Below are positions 6,391-55,721 of a stretch of DNA of 64,000 nt, piece after piece. Every line of letters starts with the position of its first letter. Position 1 is the stretch's first letter. Source of the DNA: Paragordius varius (taxonomy: Eukaryota; Animalia; Nematomorpha). Position numbers and translations under genes: made by a program. Under the pieces are notes generated by a model that saw only the letters and a list, made by a program, of their open reading frames with translations, was not told the DNA's origin and did no database searches. Location of the stretch: assembly GCA_964247055.1 (NCBI GenBank), contig OZ176054.1, positions 2,232,001 to 2,296,000 of the forward strand, in the 5' to 3' direction.

Positions 6391-6950
6391 CAAAAAACAT
6401 TGGTTAATATCGAAATAAAAATTGTTATCAAAATATTTTAATTTAAATTAAATGGAAAATCTTAGCTGGTTTTACATGCGATCCGCAAAAAATTCATTGT
6501 GCTGATTTAAAGTATAAATATTTGCATATGTGTTAAATAGCTATGTATTTGCCATTATAAGGATCATGGCTAAGGTGACCAGACGTCCCGCTTTTGGCGG
6601 GACAGTCCCGCTTTTTCACACTTTGTCCCGCCTCCCGCTACGTTTTAAAATGTCCCGCTTTTTCACGATTATATAAAAAAAATTTTTTAATACAAATAAA
6701 TTTTTTTATCCGTTTAAATTTTAAATTAAAATTTTTTATTTTTATTTTAAAAATATTTATTTTTTTTCGAATTTATATCATATTATACACTTTGCTTCCT
6801 ACTACTACTGTCATCATTATCAAAAGCCAAGTTAATACCACAAATCGGTAGCTTAAAAGACAAATTGATACCACAAATCGGTACCTTACAAGTTTATTCT
6901 AGAAAATTAAGGTAATATAATATTTATTATACTAATAGTAGTTTATAAAT

Positions 6951-8720
6951 ATGAGCACAAAAAGAGGTAATTCAACGATGAATTAATGAAAGATTTTCCT
7001 TTAGCAAAAAAACGAAGAATGAATCATTTGTTAAATGTCTTATATGCGAGGGGGAATTCACCCTAGCACATGGAAGCATGATACTACAAAGCATATGGAA
7101 ACACAGAAACATAAAAAACGTTTATATATGGCGGCATCCTCTTACAAAATGAGCGATTTTTTTCGAAAAACCGCATTTGGAGTCTTTTCACGCCGTTAAT
7201 CACAATCATTCCTTTAGATCTATGGACTGTATCTAGGTTTTTCGCACATTATTCCATAAAAAATTTACATGTGCCCGTATAAAGGCCAAAGCCATTGTGT
7301 GCAATGTCCTTTCGCCACATGCATTTTGTGAAATACAAAAAGATTTGCTGAAAATTAATATCTTATCCCTATACTCTGATGCATCAAATCACCATGAAGC
7401 AAAATTATTTCCCAAAATTTCAGATTTAATTTCTCTACCCGGTGTAAATTCCGAAAGTATATTTACTCCAATAATGAATATTCTAGAAAAAAATAATTTA
7501 AAAGACAAAATTATCGCATATTGCGCTGACAACACCAATACGAACTTTGGTGGAAAAGCAAGGAGGGGAACAAAAAATACTTTTCATAAATTAACAGATA
7601 ATCTTAATCAAAACATTATTGGCGTAGGGTGTGCAGCGCATATAATACACAACGCTATTCAAACAGCTGCAGATTTGTTGCCCTTAGATGTGGAAAATGT
7701 AGTTGTTAAAATATATTCCTATTTTTATGTATACACGGTACGTGTTGAAACGATTAAAGAATTCTGTGAAAATGCAGAAATATCAAAAAATGCTTGGATA
7801 TTGTAAAACTCGTTGGTTAGCTTTTATGTCAGCTATCGAAAGTATTTTAAAAATGTATGATCCTTTAAAATTTTTTTTATCACGGGACAAATGTCCTTCA
7901 ACTTTAAAAAAGTTTTTTGAAAGTGATTCTTCAAAAATATGGTTATTCTTACATAATCAAGCTTCTCTGTTTCAAAATGTTATTAAATTTATAGAAGGTG
8001 ACAAAATCTCGGCAATCGAAGTAGCCAATGAAGTTAGTAACCTAAAATTCCAATGTCAAGAACGGTTAGAAAATAATTTTATACCATTAACCATCCGTAT
8101 TATAATAAATAATTTAGAAAAACAAGGCTTAATAAATCGCCAAGATATCCTGTACCATATAAAAATGTTTTATACTAACTGTAAAGATTATTTGGAAGAT
8201 TGGACGACGCAATTCAATGAAATTGATCATTTTCATTGGATAACATTAAAATCAGAATTTAATTGGTGCGATGTTCAGAAATCATGATTATATCTGCTCC
8301 CAAAAATTATCAAAAAGTAATCTTTCAGAAAATGATCTTTTTTCTAAACTATTAGTTAAAAGATATATTAATAATGAAAAACTTAAATTATGGACAAAAG
8401 AAAAATATACAGTAGAAAAGAAATGGTTGGAAATATTTCATCATTTTGAAGCCAACTATAATACATACAATAATATTTTAAAAATTGTGGAATTCGCACT
8501 ATCTTTACCTGGAACCAACGCTGCTACTGAGCGCGTTTTTTTCCACAGTAAATCAGGCGTGGACATTGGAAAAATCAAATTTAAATGTTGAAACTTTAAA
8601 GGCCGTCTTATCTGTCAAATATAATTTGACAAATTCTTGTAAAGACTTTTCTACAATATTTTAAAAAATGATGACAATCTGCTAAAACGCATTCGCTCAA
8701 AAAAATATACCAATGAATAA
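6951..8720 (+). pseudogene. Frameshifted hAT transposase of copy A
   Basis: ORF fragments carry hAT motifs: BED-like C2H2, LYSDASNH and YCADNTN (catalytic D residues), GCAAHIIHN (CxxH), KTRWLA, and PGTNAATERVF (catalytic E). Several frameshifts. Confidence 0.9.
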
Positions 8721-8774
8721 AATATTTTCTTATAATTAAGTTTTTTTGTTAAAAAATAAACAAAATTACTTAAA

Positions 8775-9585
8775 ATATTGTGTAAGTCTTCATAATTTGT
8801 CAAATTATATTTGAACACATAAAATGGTTTTTATTCAACATTTAAATTTGATTTCGTGTCCTTACTTAATTTACTGTGGAAAAACGCGTTCAATAGCAGT
8901 GGTTCAGGTAAAGATAATGCAAATTCTACATTAAAATATTGTATGGAACATAATTTGTTTAAAAATGATTATTTTAACCATTTCTATCCTACGTTTTTTC
9001 TGTTGTCCATAATTTAAGTTTTCATTCAATATATTTATTTAATAATGAAACTTCATAAAAAGTGTCATTGTGCACCGTCTTGTCTTCCAAATAATCGTCT
9101 CTGTTTGTATAAAACATTTTTATATTCTGGATATTCATTGAGCCTTGTTTTTCTGGATGTTTTATAATATTGCGATTAGGTAATGGTATATTTTCTAACC
9201 TTTTTTGACTTGGAATTTTGACCTTTGTCCTGTGATAAAAAATAGGATTCTAGGAGATCACATTTTTATAAATATTTCAATCGCTGGCAAAAGAGCTAAC
9301 CAACAGTTCTACAATATCCAAGCATTTTAACATCTATATTTTCTACATCCAGGGTTAACAAATCAGTAGCTGTCTGAATAGCGTTGTGTATCTGCCAATA
9401 ATTTTTTAATTAAGATTATTCGCTAAATTGTGAAAATATTTTTTGTGCCGCTTCTTGCATCACCCAGCGCACTTTGTGATGATTTCGTCTTTATTATTCT
9501 TTTCTAGAATATTACAATCACTTCACCCTTTGTTCGTGCACATGTAAATTTAATGAATAAGGTACAAACAACCTGTAAGGTACAA
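8775..9585 (-). repeat. Inverted, internally deleted duplicate of the transposase gene inside copy A
   Basis: The reverse complement of 8856-8930 matches 8485-8565, 9355-9395 matches 7645-7700, and 9520-9585 matches ~7225-7290. Segments are colinear, with many deletions. Confidence 0.9.
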
Positions 9586-9935
9586 ATTTTTTATTTTTAT
9601 AATGTATTTGTGTTAAAAATAAATAAATATTACAATAATTTTTTGTATAAAAATTATTGGTTGTACCCCCCAATGACCCCCTCTCAGATTTGTCCCGCTT
9701 TTTCCTTAAAAAAATCTGGTCACCTTAATCATGGCCCTCGAAAACAAAATATATTTTATTTGGCCCGTCAAATTTTTTTGGTGAGTACCACTGATTTAAA
9801 CCCCTAATTTTATTTCACCCTAAAATATTTCAAATTAATTATGTGTTTCTGTCCGTTGACCCATAAAATTTAAATATTTGACTTATAAAACTGTTTTATA
9901 TCGTAAAAGTTATAAAGTATATATATAAATATATG

Positions 9936-17560: not shown

Positions 17561-19484
17561 ATGATTTTCTCCTCGTATACAGAGTCAATAGTCAAAGACA
17601 AAATGAATGATTACCATACTGAGTTAATATCAGTAGAATCAAATAAACGTAAATTAAATAGCTCTGAATCTCAGACATTTAAACCTGGTAGCACAGAAGA
17701 GAAATCCTTACATGAAAAAAATATTTGGCAACTTAAAGAATATTATCCCGTCGAACAAAATATGGAAGTCTCATCCACAAACTTTACGAGTACCATCTGC
17801 TCGAATTCTCAGGACACAACTGTTTTAAAAGTTCTGACGACAGAAAAAAAGGATTCTTCAGATGATCAACAAAATTTTGATTTGTATTACAGAGCATACC
17901 ACAAATTATTTCAGGGTATGTTGAATGGTACATCTATGAAACAGGAAGAATCAAGCATAAATGATAACCTCATGTCCCAAAACATAGATACCAGAAAAAG
18001 TATTTCAAACAACAGTCCTTTAAATACTTTACGACCAAAAGATATTAGTCCACGTCAAACTAAAAGTTATTCCACTTCAACGATACTTAACCATAAACAT
18101 ATCGAATATGAAAAGGAACACCCTATGGGAAATGGCATCCTTAAACCTGAAAATTTTGATAAAGATATCGTCAATAATAATTATAAAAGCAACATCAATA
18201 CAACAAAAAGAAAAAAGTTTGAATTGACAGATAATTCAGCAATTTCGGATAAAACCGATTTAAATGGATCAACAGATAGACTTAATCATAATATGAATAA
18301 TGGATTCTGCATGGAAGAAACTAATATTTTAGATTACGGCCACCCTATGAAAGCCTCATACCAATACTTTCAAAGTTTAATGTTAATGAATAATCACATG
18401 AGGAATTTTTACAGCTACAATAACAATAAAAACAATCCGTTTAGGGACCAGAATGTCACGTTAAATAAATCCAAATATTTAAACGATGAAAGCTTTGAAA
18501 CAAAGTCCAAAAAACTTAAAATAGACCATAATTGTTCGCCCTCTTTAGAGGACAAAACGGATATTGTTCGGAAAGACGCCAAATTTACGATAACTAATAG
18601 TGATAGCTTGGTAGAGTCTAAAAACTTGACATCATCAAACCTTTCAACCTACTTTCCAATTTGGCACAAAATTGCTGAAACAACCAATTCAATGGTTTCA
18701 GATTCGACAGATCACCACATTTTGGAAAAAAATGACACCATGAATCATATAAAACCTTTAAGAAGCAATATTCCTTTCAGCGGGAAAATGGCGGCTGATG
18801 AATATAACACTATACTTGGATACAATACTCTTTTGAATATGTATACTCAACTAATTAATGCAAATAAGGATGTTTATATATTACCTCAAAACGAGTCAAA
18901 TACTCATAAAAGTGCTGATATTAGCCATGGAACATCTTCAGTAAAAAGGACCAACAAATCTTTCCACATAAAAGATATCGGAATTTGTAAAAATAACTTA
19001 ACCACAACCCCAAAAATTAATACGAGTTCGACTTTACCCTATCAATCATATGACACATTTAATGGTTTATGTCCTTCTTTACAAAAATATTTGCAAAATT
19101 TTTCAATTCTAATGAGCTCATCTACTCCCCACTTTACACCCACAAACTTGTATACCTCAACTTTAAACAGTTTAAACTTTAGTTGTAACAATGGTAATAT
19201 TAAACCTAAATTGGGTAATCATCAAAATTTTCCGCTACCTACTGAAAATTCTCAGATAACTGCAGTTAAAAGTTGGGACGGGGAAACAAATATTTCCAGA
19301 TATACAAATGGTTGCAAATCTCACTCTACTCTATACAATAATTATATACCCAAACAATGTTTAAATGGAAACAGTTATAATCAGACAGGCGGTACGCAAA
19401 CTAAAAAATTTCCTACGGCCGTCAGAGATTCCAAAGCCAAACTCAGGGATGAGTTAACAGCTTTGTATAGAAATCCCATTTCAA
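17561..19484 (+). CDS. pros: prospero/Prox homeobox transcription factor, large N-terminal exon (low-complexity, N/S/T-rich)
   Basis: A 647-codon ORF in very AT-rich DNA. Phase-1 GT donors at 19485 and 19494 join in frame to the homeodomain exon at 19822. The exact donor and the start codon are uncertain. Confidence 0.75.
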
Positions 19485-19821
19485 GTATATACAGTAAAAT
19501 TTGAAATTATATGGACAAAAAGTAGTGTAACATAAAGATCAATTTGTTCGAAAAGACAGGCAGCCATACATTTTTACACCTTGTTTTCTTAAATATAACT
19601 AACTAATTTATCATGGGTTGCAAAATTCAAACTCAATAATAATACATTTTATAATATAGTTTAAGTGAAATCAAGGTATGAAAAAGTATAGTTGTGTCTT
19701 TGCAAAAAAATGTATTTGTCTTTTAGATATTACATTTTGTCTGTAAAACTCCAATATTTTAATGCTTTTTGATAAGTAAATTAAAGACGTCTTTATGTTT
19801 TTTATATTTTTATAAAATTAG

Positions 19822-49890: not shown

Positions 49891-52469
49891 CTGGAAATTT
49901 ATTTTAGACACCGTTCTACCGACAAATCAGCATAGCTATTTGAAACGTATATATATATATATATTTATATTATTACTTATATTCTAAAATAGTAGCATGG
50001 GATTAGCGGCCCGCGGTTTGAGTACGACTGATGGTGGCTAATTTTTCTTATGGGTAATTGATTGTCGACACCAGTTTATTTCCATATTAACGGATTGTAA
50101 AATTATTTATAGAACAGAAGTAAGGCATAACTTGGATTTTATCCCATTTGCCTTTTTTTCGTAAGCTATGATATTCCAACATATAATATTTGGTTTTTTG
50201 CCAAAATTTTCATTAATTAATTAGGTAATTGTTTATTAATGTAAAAAAATCACATAAATATTTATATTTGGGGTTTTTTTAAGGGTTAACGGTGATTTTT
50301 TAAAAAATGTTACTGTTACTATCGGAATTTCATTTCAATCGGGCATGAAAAACTGTTATCATATGATCGTTTTTTACAACAATAATAACAGAAAATCCTA
50401 AAATTAGGATGATCATTCCATTTTGATTAAAAAACCACAAAAATAGCACTCAATCAAAAATAATAATTTTAACAATAAATTTTATTTTTAATAGCAAAAA
50501 CATATGGAAACCACTTATTTTGGAACTGGAACCGAGCTGGTTCCTAAGAATTTAAAAATGGAACTAAGTTTCTAAAATTTAAAAATCAGGTTGATTCCAG
50601 TCCTACGGAAGCAGTTCCTAAAAATCCCAGGAACGGGTTCCGGTTCGAAGCCCTCTTAAATATACAGTGAGCAAAGATACATGCAACTTTTTCATCAAAG
50701 GGAATTATCATGTTTTAAACTAGTATTAGTTTATAATAATAATACCTTTGCTAAATATGCTATCTAGCAATATTTAATGAAAAATAGTATTGTATCCTTA
50801 ATCATACTGTACATTACTAGTTTTCTATTATTTGCCAGATAGCACACACAGTGAAGAGGAATTAGTTTTTTATCTTTACTTCTTGTTATTCACTAATAAT
50901 AACACTAGTCGACAAATTTGGACATTTTTGAGCACCACCACTCAAACTTTTAAGTTATGACTAATTTCAGTGTTTTAAACCCAAATGTGAATAAATTTTT
51001 GATCCCGCCAATCAGAATTTTGAAATATTATAGGTTTTTCAATTTTTCAAAAACAAGAGAAAATCGAGAGAAAATTAAATAACTTTATAATAAAATGTTA
51101 TTATATTATAAACTTAATATCATTTAATAAAGCGTTTTAAACTCTATCTTTTGAATATAAATATGTCATTTAAATATCAGAGAGAAAAAAATAGTACGGA
51201 CTTAAACGTCGAAATTTAGTCTTTTTCTTTCAAGTGAATTTTTAATACGTATAAAAAAATTTTAAAAAAATACTAAAAAAGGCATTCTATGGTTTAAACC
51301 TTCGGCTTTTAGATAGGCTATATTTTTTTGTTAGTTTTCGTCCTTTCGAGTACTTATTAGGCTTTTTTTCTTGAGTTGGTTCTTACAAAAAATCCTTTAT
51401 TTATACCTAGTGGATATACTTTATTTTTTAAAATTATTGATTGTTTTGTATTTTTAATTTCAGATGGATGTTGTGTAGCCACTTTTAGTAGAATTTACTA
51501 TTATGGGATTGGACCATTTGTATTTACCTAATCTTTTTATTCAATTTAATTGTAGAATTTATCTAACTTTATTCTGTAAATTGGTTAATTTGACATGTCA
51601 ATTTGCCACGATTTTGCTTGCAAGTCTCTCTTATCGGACTGTACGATTACTTATTGTTATTTGCCATATCTGGCATAATTGGATCGCTTGGGGATATGCA
51701 GAGCTTGTGCAGCCGCCCGGATCTATCACACTATACATAAGCCCCTTTTAGATTTTTAATACTTTGGCTCTTAGATTGTTTAGTATCTTATTAAATGCCT
51801 AGAATTTTGTTATTCATGCATGGAATATAACTTGTATCGACTTGTTCGTTTGAAATTTAAACATATGTACACGAGGAATGATTGTTATTTTTAAATTAAA
51901 TCCAAATTTAAAAATTAAATTTCGGAAAAATCCTATTGGTGGCCTCAATTTTCTTTTTTGTTTTGGCCTTTCCATGCCATTAGGTATCGGAAAATGCAAG
52001 AATAATGGGGTGGTGCAAAACCTTGTTGAGCAGTGTAATTCTCATTCATGTCTGCCAATATTTAATACAAAATTAGCAATAACTGGTGTCGTAAAAAAAT
52101 TTACAAACGCAACCTAATCAGGGTTGAGAAAAAAACCATCTTATATCACCAGTATTATTTTAAATCAATTGAAAAATGTGATGTATTAAAATGTATAACC
52201 GCATAAAAATAATTTTTTTTGTCGCACAATTTATTGAAATTCAATTAAAAATTAATTGTAAATTTAGCCCTGAATACTTTAAAAAAATGATATAAAATTT
52301 TACTACTACGTATGTAGTATACGTAAGGTGACCAGATTTTTTGAAGGATAAAGCGGGACAAATCTGAGAAGGGGGGGGGGGGGTCATTGGGGGGTACAAC
52401 CAAAAATTTTTATACAAAAAATTTATTGTAATATTTATTTATTTTTAACACAAATACATTATAAATATA

Positions 52470-53297
52470 AAATGTACCTTACAGGTTGTTTGTACTCTAT
52501 TCAATAAATTTACATGTGCACGAACAAAGGGTGAGTGATTGTAATATTCTAGAAAAAAAATAATAAAGACGAAATCACAAAGTGCGCTGGGTGATGCAAG
52601 AAGCGGCACAAAAAATATTTTTAACAATTTAGCGAATAATCTTAATCGAAACATTATTGGAAGATACACAACGCTATTCAAACAGCTACTGATTTGTTAC
52701 CCCTGGATGTGGAAAATATAGATGTTAAAATGCTTGGATATTGTAGAACTGTTGGTTAGCTCTTTTGCCAGCGATTGAAATATTTCTAAAAATGTGATCT
52801 CCTAGAATCCTGTTTTTTATCACAGGACAAAGGTCAAAAATCCAAGTCAAAAAAAGTTAGAAAATAATTTTATACCATTACCTAATCGCAATATTATAAA
52901 GCTCCAGAAAAACAAGGCTCAATGAATAGCCAGAATATAAAAATGTTTTATACAAACAGAAACGATTATTTGGAAGACAAGACGGTGCACAATGACACTT
53001 TTTGATGAAGTCTCATTATTCAATAAATATATTGAATGAAAACTTATATTATGGGCAACAGAAAAAAATACGTAGGATAGAAATGGTTAAAATAATCATT
53101 TTTAAACAAATTATGTTCCATACAAAATTATTTTAATTGTAGAATTTGGATTATCTTTACCTGAACCACTGCTATTGAACGCGTTTTTCCACAGTAAATT
53201 AAGTAAGGACACGGAATCAAATTTAAATATTGAATAAAAGCCATTTTGTGTGTTCAAATATAATTTGACAAATTATAAAGACTTATACAATATTTTA
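52470..53297 (+). repeat. Inverted, condensed transposase duplicate inside copy B
   Basis: Homologous to 8775-9585. AGACTTATACAATATTTT (~53280-53297) is the exact reverse complement of ~53405-53422. Confidence 0.9.
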
Positions 53298-53342
53298 CGT
53301 GATTTTGTTTATTTTTTTACACAAAAACTTTAAAGAAAATAT

Positions 53343-55002
53343 TTTATTCTTTGGTATATTTTTTGTTTGAGTGAATGCGTTTTGGCAGATTGTCATCATT
53401 TTTTAAAATATTGTATAAGTCTTCACAAGAATTTGTTAAATTATATTTGACATATAAAACGGCCTTTAAAGTTTTAACATTTAAATTTGATTTTTCCGAT
53501 GTCCACACCTGATTTACTATGGAAAAAACGCAGTAGCAGCGTTGGTTCCAGGTAAAGATAGTGCGAATTCCACAATTTTTAAAATATTATTGTATGTAAT
53601 ATAGTTGGCTTCAAAATGATGAAATATTTCCAACCATTTCTTTTCTACTGTATATTTTTCTTTGTCCATAATTTAAGTTTTTCATAATTAATATATCTTT
53701 TAACTAATGATTCTTCAGAAAAAAAGATCATTTTCTGAAAGATTACTTTTTGAGAATTTATGAGAACAGATATAATCAAATGATTTTTAAACATCGCACC
53801 AATTAAATTCTGATTTTAATGTTATCCAATGAAAATGATCAATTTCATTGAATTGCGTCGTCCAGTTTTCCAAATAATCTTTACAGTTTGTATAAAACAT
53901 TTTTATATGGTACAGGATATCTTGGCGATTTATTAAGCCTTGTTTTTCTAATTATTTATTATATTGCGGATGGTTAATGGTATAAAATTATTTTCTAACC
54001 GTTCTTGACATTGGAATTTTAGGTTACTAACGTCATTGGCTACTTCGATTGTCGAAATTTTGTCACCTTCTATAAATTTAATAACATTTTGAAAGAGAGA
54101 AGCTTGTTTATGTAAGAATTCTAACCATATTTTTGAAGAATCACTTTCAAAAAACTTTTTTAAAGTTGTAGGATATTTGTCCTGTGATAAAAAAAGATTT
54201 TAAATGATCATACATTTTTAAAATTCTTTCGATAGCTGGCATAAAAGCTAACCAACGAGTTTTACAATATCCAAGCATTTTTGATATTGAACTTCTGCAT
54301 TTTCACAGAATTCTTTAAGCGTTTCAACACTACCGTGTATATATAAAAATAGGAATATATTTTAACAACTACATTTTCCACATCTAGGGGTAACAAATCA
54401 GCAGCTGTTTAAATAGCGTTGTGTATTATATGCGCTGCACACCCAACGCCAATAATGTTTTGATTAAGATTAACTGTTAATTTATGAAAAATATTTTTTT
54501 TTCCTCTCCTTGCTTTTCCACCAAAGTTCATATTAGTGTTGTCAGCGCAATATACGATAATTTTGTATTTTAAATTATTTTTTTGCATTATTGAAGTAAA
54601 TATTATTTCGGAATTTTCACCGGGTAGGGAAATTAAATCTAATTTATTGAATAAGGTGCGAATAACCTGTAAGGTCCAGTCCATATATCTAAAGGAATGA
54701 TTGTGATTAACAGCGTGAAAAGACAACACGCCCTCAGCTAGTGCCAAATTCTTTTCTTCCTCTCCAAAAGGGGTTTTTCGAAAAATATCGCTCATTTTGT
54801 AAGATGATGCCGCCATATCTAAACATTTTTTATGTTTCTGTGTTTCCATATGCTTTGTAATATCATACTTGCCGCCATATGCTAGGGTGAATTCCCCCTC
54901 GCATTTAAGACATTTAACAAATGATTCATTCTTCGTTTTTTTAATAAAAGGAAAATCCTTCATTAATTCATCGTTGAATTTACAACCTCTTTTTGTGCTC
55001 AT
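53343..55002 (-). pseudogene. Frameshifted hAT transposase of copy B
   Basis: ORF 54409-55002 (MSTKRGCKFN...KCLKC...H..TQKH...YCADNTN...GCAAHIIHN) plus downstream fragments colinear with copy A. Confidence 0.9.
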
Positions 55003-55721
55003 ATTTATAAACTACTATTAGTATAATAATATTATATTAACTTAATTTTCTGGAATAAACGTGTAAGGTACCGATTTGTGGTATCAATTTGTCTTTTAAG
55101 CTACCGATTTGTGGTATTAATTTGGCTTTTTAATAATGTTGGCAAGTAATAAAACTAAAATATTAAATAAATATTATATTACCTTAATTTTGTGAAATAA
55201 ACGTGTAAGGTACCGATTTGTGGTATCAATTTGTCTTTTAATCTAGAGATTTGTGGTATTAACTTGGCTTTTTGATAATAATGACAGTAGTAGTAGGAAG
55301 TATAGTGTATAATCATTGATATAAATTCGAAAAAAATAAATATTTTAAATTTAAAATAAAAAAATTTAATTTAAAATTGAATAGATTTTAAAGATATTTA
55401 ATGATAAAAAATTTAAACGGACAAAAAAAATTTATTTGTATTAAAAAAAATTTTTTTTATATAATCGTGAAAAAGCGGGACATTTAAAAACGTAGCAGAA
55501 AGCGGGACAAAGTGTGAAAAAGCGGGACTGTCCCGCCAAAAGCGGGACGTCTGGTCACCTTAAGTATACGTTACTAGTTTTTCATTAATTATTGCAAAAT
55601 AGCATAAAGCATAGGGTACTATTAGTCTGTGTTGCTATTTTCGCTTTTTACGAAAATTAGCCCTCTTTGCTAAATTCGGATTTCTGGCAATGTTTAATCA
55701 CTAGCAACGTATATTTACTCA

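What the first reader, a model, noticed from the sequence alone, without database searches (positions are those of the whole stretch)
6571..9727. hAT transposon carrying a built-in inverted copy of its own transposase (candidate self-silencing hairpin element)
Seen: ~800 bp (8775-9585) is a reverse-complement, colinear, deletion-condensed copy of the transposase region ~7225-8665. The two arms are separated by a loop of only ~100 nt, which contains the stop codon and two AATAAA hexamers (8716, 8755). The whole structure lies inside intact TIRs and TSD. Known: an inverted duplication of MuDR (maize Mu killer) makes hairpin RNA that silences its family in trans. Inference: read-through past the loop poly(A) signals would give long dsRNA against the catalytic core. 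Poly(A)-site choice could then act as a switch between transposase mRNA and silencing RNA, encoded in the mobile unit itself.
Basis: partly seen in the sequence, partly recalled or inferred. Interest (0 to 1): 0.82.

Follow-up and report, generated by a model that had tools for sequence, protein, structure and literature searches.

The report
hAT transposon with inverted self-copy
A cut-and-paste (hAT) jumping gene carries, inside its own ends, an old, shrunken mirror-image copy of its transposase gene and spread with it to over 200 places, but the mirror copy looks like decaying passive cargo, not a working self-silencer.

Summary
Window 6571-9727 is a hAT element with a 13-bp TIR and an 8-bp TSD. 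Its 8771-9574 segment is a colinear, reverse-complement, deletion-condensed copy of 7235-8663 (69-78% identity). The loop is about 107 nt and holds the stop codon and two poly(A) hexamers.

The arm is family-wide. All 43 copies I read carry it, 29 have perfect and mutually different TSDs, and genome-wide markers count 221 ORFs against 222 arms. A consensus of 25 copies has 627 sense codons and no stop, so an autonomous ancestor already had the arm.

Sequence evidence argues against a working silencer:
- The arms differ by about 13% in substitutions plus many indels even in the consensus, while copies differ by about 5%.
- The arm changed about four times faster than the ORF.
- Only 2.5% of the arm's 21-mers match the ORF perfectly.
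- Related elements elsewhere lack the arm.
- The 77 best-scoring of 2033 candidate stretches yielded no full-length stop-free ORF.
- The window copy is a deleted, frameshifted derivative.

A roughly 50-nt direct repeat brackets the arm, which suggests a template-switch origin.

This scan had already found the same family at other loci (s1-257526), with the same conclusion. No RNA data could be examined, so function remains untested.

The parts
6563..6570 (.). left target-site duplication (ATCATGGC)
   Evidence: Read and identical to 9728-9735. One search confirms it for L001, which is this copy.
6571..6583 (+). left terminal inverted repeat, 13 bp, starting TAAGG
   Evidence: Genome-wide, the 24-mer that includes it occurs 387 times at up to 2 mismatches.
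6584..6941 (+). 5' subterminal region and leader, with GTCCCGC motifs in both orientations and two 33-nt tandem units (6822-6887)
   Evidence: (families D3 and D4). This copy lacks 147 nt that B-type copies have here.
6952..8720 (+). transposase gene remnant (hAT), broken by frameshifts and two internal deletions
   Evidence: ORF fragments. Weak Dimer_Tnp_hAT match on 8271-8591. The family consensus is colinear with P0001 and P0002. Indels are listed.
7235..8663 (+). left arm: the part of the gene that is mirrored downstream
   Evidence: blastn blocks and pairs I1-I20.
8664..8770 (+). loop of about 107 nt with the stop codon (8718-8720) and poly(A) hexamers at 8716 and 8755; 8720-8769 is direct-repeat copy X
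   Evidence: 27 of 35 copies keep two hexamers, and every copy keeps at least one.
8771..9583 (-). right arm: reverse-complement, deletion-condensed copy of the transposase gene
   Evidence: tblastn hits on minus frames cover P0001 residues 49-70, 203-228, 261-287 and 339-545. The arm-specific 24-mer occurs 222 times in the genome.
9584..9633 (+). direct-repeat copy X' of the 3' UTR start, with poly(A) hexamers at 9618 and 9622
   Evidence: D2; plus-strand hit, 78%. In the consensus the alignment score is 31, against a maximum of 22 in 2000 shuffles and a maximum of 20 in 159 AT-rich background windows.
9634..9714 (+). 3' subterminal region with a GTCCCGC motif
   Evidence: (D4).
9715..9727 (-). 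right terminal inverted repeat
9728..9735 (.). right target-site duplication
52324..55562 (-). second copy of the same family in the window, also carrying the arm, with TSD CGTATACT and its own internal deletion

Best explanation
This is one copy of a hAT DNA transposon family whose master element once duplicated its own transposase gene in inverted orientation into its 3' UTR. The likely cause was a fold-back or template-switch error during repair or replication, which left a direct repeat of about 50 nt of the 3' UTR start on either side of the insert.

The insert sits between the gene and the 3' end sequences needed for transposition. It was therefore carried along at every jump. It has since decayed and shrunk like neutral DNA, while the transposase gene stayed intact under selection. 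The family then amplified to at least about 220 gene-bearing copies, plus about 165 further left ends. No copy read or scored has an intact frame.

The window copy belongs to a young subfamily with internal deletions. It was presumably moved in trans. A read-through RNA would fold into a long imperfect hairpin, but I take that as a by-product, not a maintained function.

Shown: the anatomy, copy numbers, TSDs, relative ages and the decay pattern. Inferred: the template-switch origin and the lack of present function.
For: Family and mobility:
- hAT identity rests on 29 perfect 8-bp TSDs, all different, a TIR starting TAAGG, and Dimer_Tnp_hAT at 26.7 bits against a cut-off of 21.4. Relatives carry the same domain.
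- The arm is present in 43 of 43 copies read.
- Genome-wide markers count 221 ORFs against 222 arms.

Age and ancestry:
- Copies differ by 1.5-7%, mean 4.7%.
- The consensus arms differ by 13.4% in substitutions, with 103 gap columns.
- The B-type consensus has 627 sense codons and no stop. Its one frame change lies in a T homopolymer of variable length.

Neutral decay of the arm:
- Polarised against outgroups, 44 amino-acid changes fall on the arm and 11 on the ORF, and the arm has 3 stops.
- Arm-versus-ORF differences by codon position are 15.5%, 9.1% and 15.5%.
- Between the two subfamily consensuses, the arm differs by 1.8% and the dead ORF by 2.0%.
- Only 20 of 814 arm 21-mers match the ORF perfectly in the consensus, and 2 of 798 in the window copy.

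Comparison and origin:
- Related elements with nearly the same TIR have 120-364 nt between the ORF end and the right TIR and no arm. Here that distance is 1028 nt.
- The direct repeat bracketing the arm is significant.
- Template-switch capture by animal TIR transposons, mostly hAT, is documented in PMC8277862.
Against: - The arm was kept in an autonomous lineage long enough to accumulate about 11% neutral change before most insertions, and no arm-less copy was seen. Some benefit, or at least tolerance under selection, is therefore not excluded.
- The poly(A)-bearing segment is duplicated on both sides of the arm, which fits an alternative-polyadenylation design.
- The predicted hairpin is very stable, with MFE -827 against -437 +/- 9 kcal/mol in shuffles, and has five helices of at least 19 bp.
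- One Dicer-type locus and two Piwi-domain loci exist in the genome, so RNAi is conceivable.
- Neutral decay measured in dead copies and in a non-autonomous subfamily cannot reveal selection that acted only on the active master.
- No RNA data were available.
Confidence: 0.62

Rival explanations
1. The arm is, or was, a working built-in silencer. Read-through past the proximal poly(A) signals yields a hairpin RNA that Dicer processes into siRNAs against the family's transposase mRNA. This would give copy-number-dependent self-limitation, in effect a mobile Mu killer.
For: - The inverted self-copy lies inside the TIRs in every copy.
- The ancestor was autonomous and already carried the arm.
- The predicted hairpin is strong.
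- Poly(A) hexamers lie on both sides of the arm.
- Dicer-type and Argonaute-type loci are present.
- Inverted duplications of transposase genes silence MuDR and Ac in maize (PMC3440606; bioRxiv 10.1101/2020.01.07.897926).
Against: - The arms were only 76-79% identical when the family amplified.
- Only 2.5% of the arm's 21-mers match the ORF perfectly.
- There is no sign of concerted evolution or constraint on the arm.
- The family still reached more than 200 copies.
- Relatives lack the arm.
- No RdRP was found that could amplify a weak trigger (a weak negative).
- Not testable here without RNA data.
Confidence: 0.17
2. The arm is not a self-duplication. It would be the remnant of a second, related hAT element that inserted or recombined tail-to-tail in inverted orientation and then lost its ends.
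For: The arms are strongly diverged even in the consensus. Other first readers of this scan described the structure as tail-to-tail.
Against: - No internal TIR copies or 8-bp TSD lie at the arm's borders (one search finds only the terminal TIRs in most copies).
- The arm is bracketed by a direct repeat of about 50 nt of the host element's own 3' UTR. That is not what an insertion leaves.
- Arm-versus-ORF differences show no excess at third codon positions, which two independently selected genes would show.
- No closer source family appeared among the genomic matches.
Confidence: 0.1
3. The palindrome is an assembly or sequencing artefact, such as a chimeric fold-back read.
For: None beyond the general fact that long-read assemblies can contain fold-back chimeras.
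Against: The same structure, with the same internal deletions in the arm, recurs at 43 separate loci with different flanks and TSDs.
Confidence: 0.01

Closest known systems
Mu killer (Muk) of maize
   Same: A partial inverted duplication of a DNA transposon's transposase gene that can fold into a long hairpin RNA (PMC3440606, abstract seen).
   Different: Muk is a single immobile locus, transcribed by read-through from a flanking gene. It has near-identical arms and genetically proven silencing. Here the duplication lies inside the mobile unit, exists in more than 200 copies in an animal genome, has arms only 76-79% alike, and has no functional evidence.
Ac/Ds composite insertions made by alternative transposition (maize)
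   Same: Same superfamily (hAT). Inverted duplications of element sequence arise from the element's own aberrant activity and give dsRNA and siRNAs (bioRxiv 10.1101/2020.01.07.897926).
   Different: Those are composite, locus-bound rearrangements that involve the ends of two elements and flanking DNA. Here there are no extra termini or host DNA inside the element, and the unit remained transposable.
Tam3 Stabiliser loci (Antirrhinum)
   Same: hAT derivatives with rearranged or head-to-head structure that produce small RNAs and suppress transposition (bioRxiv 10.1101/2024.06.24.600476).
   Different: Those are specific loci whose small RNAs come from the 5' terminal regions. They are not an inverted copy of the coding region carried by every family member.
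Pack-TIR elements and template-switch capture in animal TIR transposons
   Same: An extra segment is acquired between the TIRs by template switching during gap filling or replication, then amplified by transposition with distinct TSDs. Most cases are hAT (PMC8277862).
   Different: The captured segment here is the element's own gene in inverted orientation, not host DNA. The copy number is also far higher than the multicopy cases described there.

Membership tests
hAT superfamily of DNA transposons | 8-bp target-site duplication | tested here: met
   29 copies have perfect 8-bp TSDs, all different, with target consensus NNYATRNN. The window copy has ATCATGGC on both sides.
hAT superfamily of DNA transposons | short terminal inverted repeats of the YARNG type | tested here: met
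   The 13-bp TIR starts TAAGG and is present at both ends of 35 copies. That YARNG is the hAT consensus is from my own knowledge.
hAT superfamily of DNA transposons | transposase with the hAT C-terminal dimerisation domain (PF05699) | tested here: met
   The ORF in L025 scores 26.7 bits against a cut-off of 21.4. The window copy scores only 18.5 bits, below the cut-off. 7 of 9 relatives match.
hAT superfamily of DNA transposons | RNase H-like DDE catalytic core | tested here: inconclusive
   No Pfam model hit the core. Relatives at 43-59% identity include one that its source names 'Ribonuclease H-like domain'. Invariant D and E columns exist in alignment A1, but I did not assign them to the catalytic triad.
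Mu killer-type hairpin silencer | inverted duplication of the transposase coding region | tested here: met
Mu killer-type hairpin silencer | arms alike enough to give siRNAs that match the target | tested here: not met
   Arms are 76-79% identical. 20 of 814 arm 21-mers are perfect in the consensus, and 2 of 798 in the window copy.
Mu killer-type hairpin silencer | transcription through both arms, derived small RNAs, and silencing of active elements | not testable with these tools
   No RNA or small-RNA data were available for this genome.
Composite insertion by alternative transposition (Ac/Ds type) | extra element termini and/or flanking host DNA inside the rearranged unit | tested here: not met
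   Only the two terminal TIRs are found in nearly all copies. The whole interior aligns to element sequence.
Pack-TIR / template-switch capture | extra segment between the TIRs, amplified with distinct TSDs | tested here: met
   Related elements have 120-364 nt where this family has 1028 nt. The census shows amplification.
Pack-TIR / template-switch capture | homology at the junctions that guided the switch | tested here: inconclusive
   A significant direct repeat of about 50 nt brackets the arm. The exact original junctions are blurred by later decay.

The most novel reading that the evidence does not exclude
The inverted arm began as a perfect hairpin that throttled an autonomous hAT element from within. 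That would have let the element persist quietly for a long time. Only when the arm had decayed to about 80% identity did the brake fail, and the family then burst to hundreds of copies. On this reading the arm is a self-encoded, mutationally decaying timer of transposon activity carried in the mobile unit itself. A weaker form is that the remaining perfect helices of 19-22 bp still feed siRNAs.
Probability: 0.1. Interest if true: 0.8.

Novelty: new variant of a known kind. Interest (0 to 1): 0.42.

Why it matters
Known transposase hairpins that silence DNA transposons (Mu killer, Ac composite insertions, Tam3 Stabiliser) are immobile, one-off plant loci. Here the same architecture sits inside the mobile unit of an animal hAT family and was copied more than 200 times from an autonomous ancestor.

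My three full-text searches on hairpins and inverted duplications in transposons found no description of such a family.

If the arm ever acted, it would be a self-encoded regulator of a DNA transposon. If it never acted, it shows that a transposon can tolerate and spread about 0.8 kb of antisense self-sequence. It would also be a clear natural example of self-capture by template switching.

Either way, small-RNA and long-read RNA data from this organism would settle the question directly.

Tried and rejected
Explanations tested and rejected:
- Alternative genetic code as the reason for the broken frames. All three stop codons occur, and frameshifting indels are present.
- Arm captured from a diverged family that was itself under selection. 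There is no excess of differences at third codon positions, and no closer source was found.
- Arm as a general feature of this hAT clade. None of nine full-length relatives in metagenome contigs has it. Four of these have recognisable ends and a short 3' region.
- Assembly artefact. The census of copies refutes it.

Searches that gave nothing:
- Rfam on the whole window had no match.
- Pfam on the window's ORF fragments gave only a sub-threshold hAT domain.

Steps I could not run:
I used 24-mer marker counts instead.
I recomputed the same table from files.
- I did not test the host's identity. Other agents of this scan take it for a horsehair worm.
- I did not use the large protein search.

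Full report
**1. Observation**

Window 6571-9727 is bounded by a 13-bp terminal inverted repeat, TAAGGTGACCAGA at 6571-6583 with its complement at 9715-9727. It is flanked by an 8-bp duplication, ATCATGGC, at 6563-6570 and 9728-9735.

- The repeat finder lists a chain of colinear inverted pairs.
- A sensitive blastn gives five colinear minus-strand blocks pairing 8771-9574 with 8663-7235. Identity is 69-78% with many gaps, and E-values reach 2e-52.
- Such hexamers occur about 2.9 times per kb per strand in this window.

The arms, however, are far from identical.

**2. What the element is**

The plus strand carries fragments of a transposase.

- In the window copy only a sub-threshold Dimer_Tnp_hAT match is left.
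- In a better-preserved copy (L025) the domain passes Pfam's cut-off, at 26.7 against 21.4 bits.
- A 352-aa ORF from copy L007 finds 560-616-aa proteins of beetles, moths, ticks, aphids and a dragonfly at 43-59% identity. Sources name several of them hAT dimerisation or RNase H-like proteins. Seven of nine carry PF05699.

With the 8-bp TSD and the TAAGG end, this is a hAT element.

**3. Census in the window's own genome (110.6 Mb, 44 contigs)**

- The element as a DNA query finds at least 40 near-full-length copies. All run through the arm to the right end.
- Twelve loci found independently with protein P0001 also all carry the arm.
- So does a second copy in this window, at 52324-55562 on the minus strand.
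- In total, 43 of 43 copies read have the arm.
- 29 copies have perfect 8-bp TSDs, all different. A-T is invariant at positions 4-5, giving the target NNYATRNN. The arm-bearing unit is therefore what jumped.
- 24-mer markers at up to 2 mismatches count 387 left ends, 221 copies of a left-ORF-only marker and 222 copies of an arm-only marker. The reversed-pattern controls gave zero.

**4. Coding state**

- Copies differ from each other by 1.5-7% in substitutions, mean 4.7%.
- None of the 35 extracted copies has an intact frame. The longest ORF is 352 aa.
- The 77 best-scoring of 2033 candidate stretches gave 91 protein matches. Every full-length match has stops of all three kinds, and the only stop-free matches are partial.
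- The majority consensus of the 25 B-type copies reads 627 sense codons without a stop. It is colinear with P0001 and P0002. Its single frame change lies in a T homopolymer whose length varies among copies.
- The master that gave rise to these copies therefore encoded a complete transposase and already carried the arm.
- The window copy belongs to subfamily A (10 copies about 2% apart). This subfamily shares internal deletions, and even its consensus is out of frame.
- Against the B consensus, the window copy has 14 indels in the ORF, 9 of them not a multiple of three. It cannot make transposase.

**5. Age and mode of evolution of the arm**

- Even between the consensus ORF and the consensus arm, identity is only 73-82% per block. 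At gap-free sites 13.4% differ, and there are 103 gap columns. The arm is therefore several times older than the average insertion.
- Differences by codon position are 15.5%, 9.1% and 15.5%. This is not the third-position excess expected if the arm came from a separately selected gene.
- I polarised 276 gap-free codons with three outgroup proteins. In 44, the ORF keeps the outgroup residue and the arm has changed. In 11 the reverse holds. The arm has 3 stops.
- So the arm decayed about four times faster than the gene. The gene itself also changed after the duplication while staying open.
- Between the two subfamily consensuses, the arm differs by 1.8%, the (dead) ORF by 2.0%, and the ends by 1.4%.

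Nothing indicates constraint or concerted evolution of the arms.

**6. Hairpin potential**

- RNA of 7225-9590 folds at -827 kcal/mol, against -437 +/- 9 for dinucleotide shuffles. It has 677 inter-arm pairs and five uninterrupted helices of at least 19 bp.
- The loop-proximal 739 nt give z = -23.7.
- Any inverted repeat would do this.
- Only 20 of 814 arm 21-mers match the ORF perfectly in the consensus, and 2 of 798 within the window copy.
- The genome has one Dicer-type locus and two Piwi-domain loci. I found no RdRP, which is a weak negative.

**7. Relatives elsewhere**

- 36 metagenome contigs encode relatives. None has an inverted copy of its ORF.
- One relative (L059/L060) is a complete 2573-bp element with the TIR CAAGGTGACCA, an 8-bp TSD, and 364 nt from ORF end to right end.
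- Three others with similar ends have 120-276 nt there.
- In this family the distance is 1028 nt, of which about 830 nt are the arm.
- The arm is therefore a lineage-specific addition.

**8. Origin**

- The arm is bracketed by a direct repeat of the first roughly 50 nt of the 3' UTR, at window 8720-8769 and 9584-9633.
- In the consensus this repeat scores 31. The maximum was 22 in 2000 shuffles and 20 in 159 AT-rich background windows.
- There are no internal TIRs and no 8-bp duplication at the arm's borders.
- This fits a fold-back or template switch during gap repair or replication, not a nested insertion or alternative transposition.
- Template-switch capture is documented for animal hAT elements (PMC8277862).
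- Because the repeat contains the poly(A) hexamer, the hexamer now lies on both sides of the arm.

**9. Comparison with known systems**

The closest published cases are Mu killer (PMC3440606), Ac composite insertions (bioRxiv 10.1101/2020.01.07.897926) and the Tam3 Stabiliser loci (bioRxiv 10.1101/2024.06.24.600476). All are single immobile plant loci with experimental proof of small RNAs. My searches found no family in which the inverted self-copy is part of the mobile unit and amplified.

**10. Earlier notes of this scan**

- The same family was flagged at several other loci. One follow-up (s1-257526) reached the same conclusion: at least about 160 places, with the arm decaying as passive cargo. 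My own counts and tests agree and extend it.
- Other agents take the genome for a horsehair worm. I did not test that. Published hairworm assemblies are reported as 200-300 Mb (bioRxiv 10.1101/2024.06.11.598342), while this assembly is 110.6 Mb.

**11. Verdict**

This is a real, family-wide and unusual architecture. The best explanation is an old self-capture that now rides along as decaying cargo. A silencing role, past or residual, is not excluded, but it needs RNA data.

Noticed in passing
window 52324-55562 (minus strand): A second full copy of the same family, 3239 bp, with TSD CGTATACT. It carries the arm and its own internal deletion of about 200 bp in the N-terminal part of the gene.
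   Followed up: partly
window 17561-19504 (+): A 647-aa open reading frame, by far the longest in the window, has no Pfam match. It could be a lineage-specific gene or the protein of another mobile element.
   Followed up: partly
G000 C2:3353388-3355921, C1:12319268-12327742 and C4:9128416-9128589: A six-frame search finds only two loci with Piwi domains and one with a Dicer dimerisation domain. No eukaryotic RdRP was found in the whole assembly. That is a lean small-RNA toolkit, if the counts hold.
   Followed up: no
TSDs of 29 copies (loci L001-L042 and the window): The family has a strict target preference. Positions 4-5 of the 8-bp duplication are always A-T, position 3 is a pyrimidine in 28 of 29, and position 6 is a purine in 26 of 29 (NNYATRNN). 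This differs from the nTnnnnAn consensus I recall for hAT elements.
   Followed up: partly
window 6822-6887; consensus positions about 265-533 in B-type copies: 33-nt tandem units lie upstream of the start codon, and B-type copies have a tandem duplication of about 146 nt in the 5' leader that subfamily A lacks. A similar short motif may also end the inverted arm (6875-6901 against 9563-9589).
   Followed up: no
L059 666-3238 and L060 3408-5980 (metagenome contigs): A 2573-bp relative with only 37% protein identity has almost the same end sequence (CAAGGTGACCA) and an 8-bp TSD. The transposase-binding ends are much better conserved than the protein.
   Followed up: partly
genome-wide: About 165 more left ends than gene or arm markers. 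This suggests a population of short, internally deleted derivatives of the family, which I did not read.
   Followed up: no
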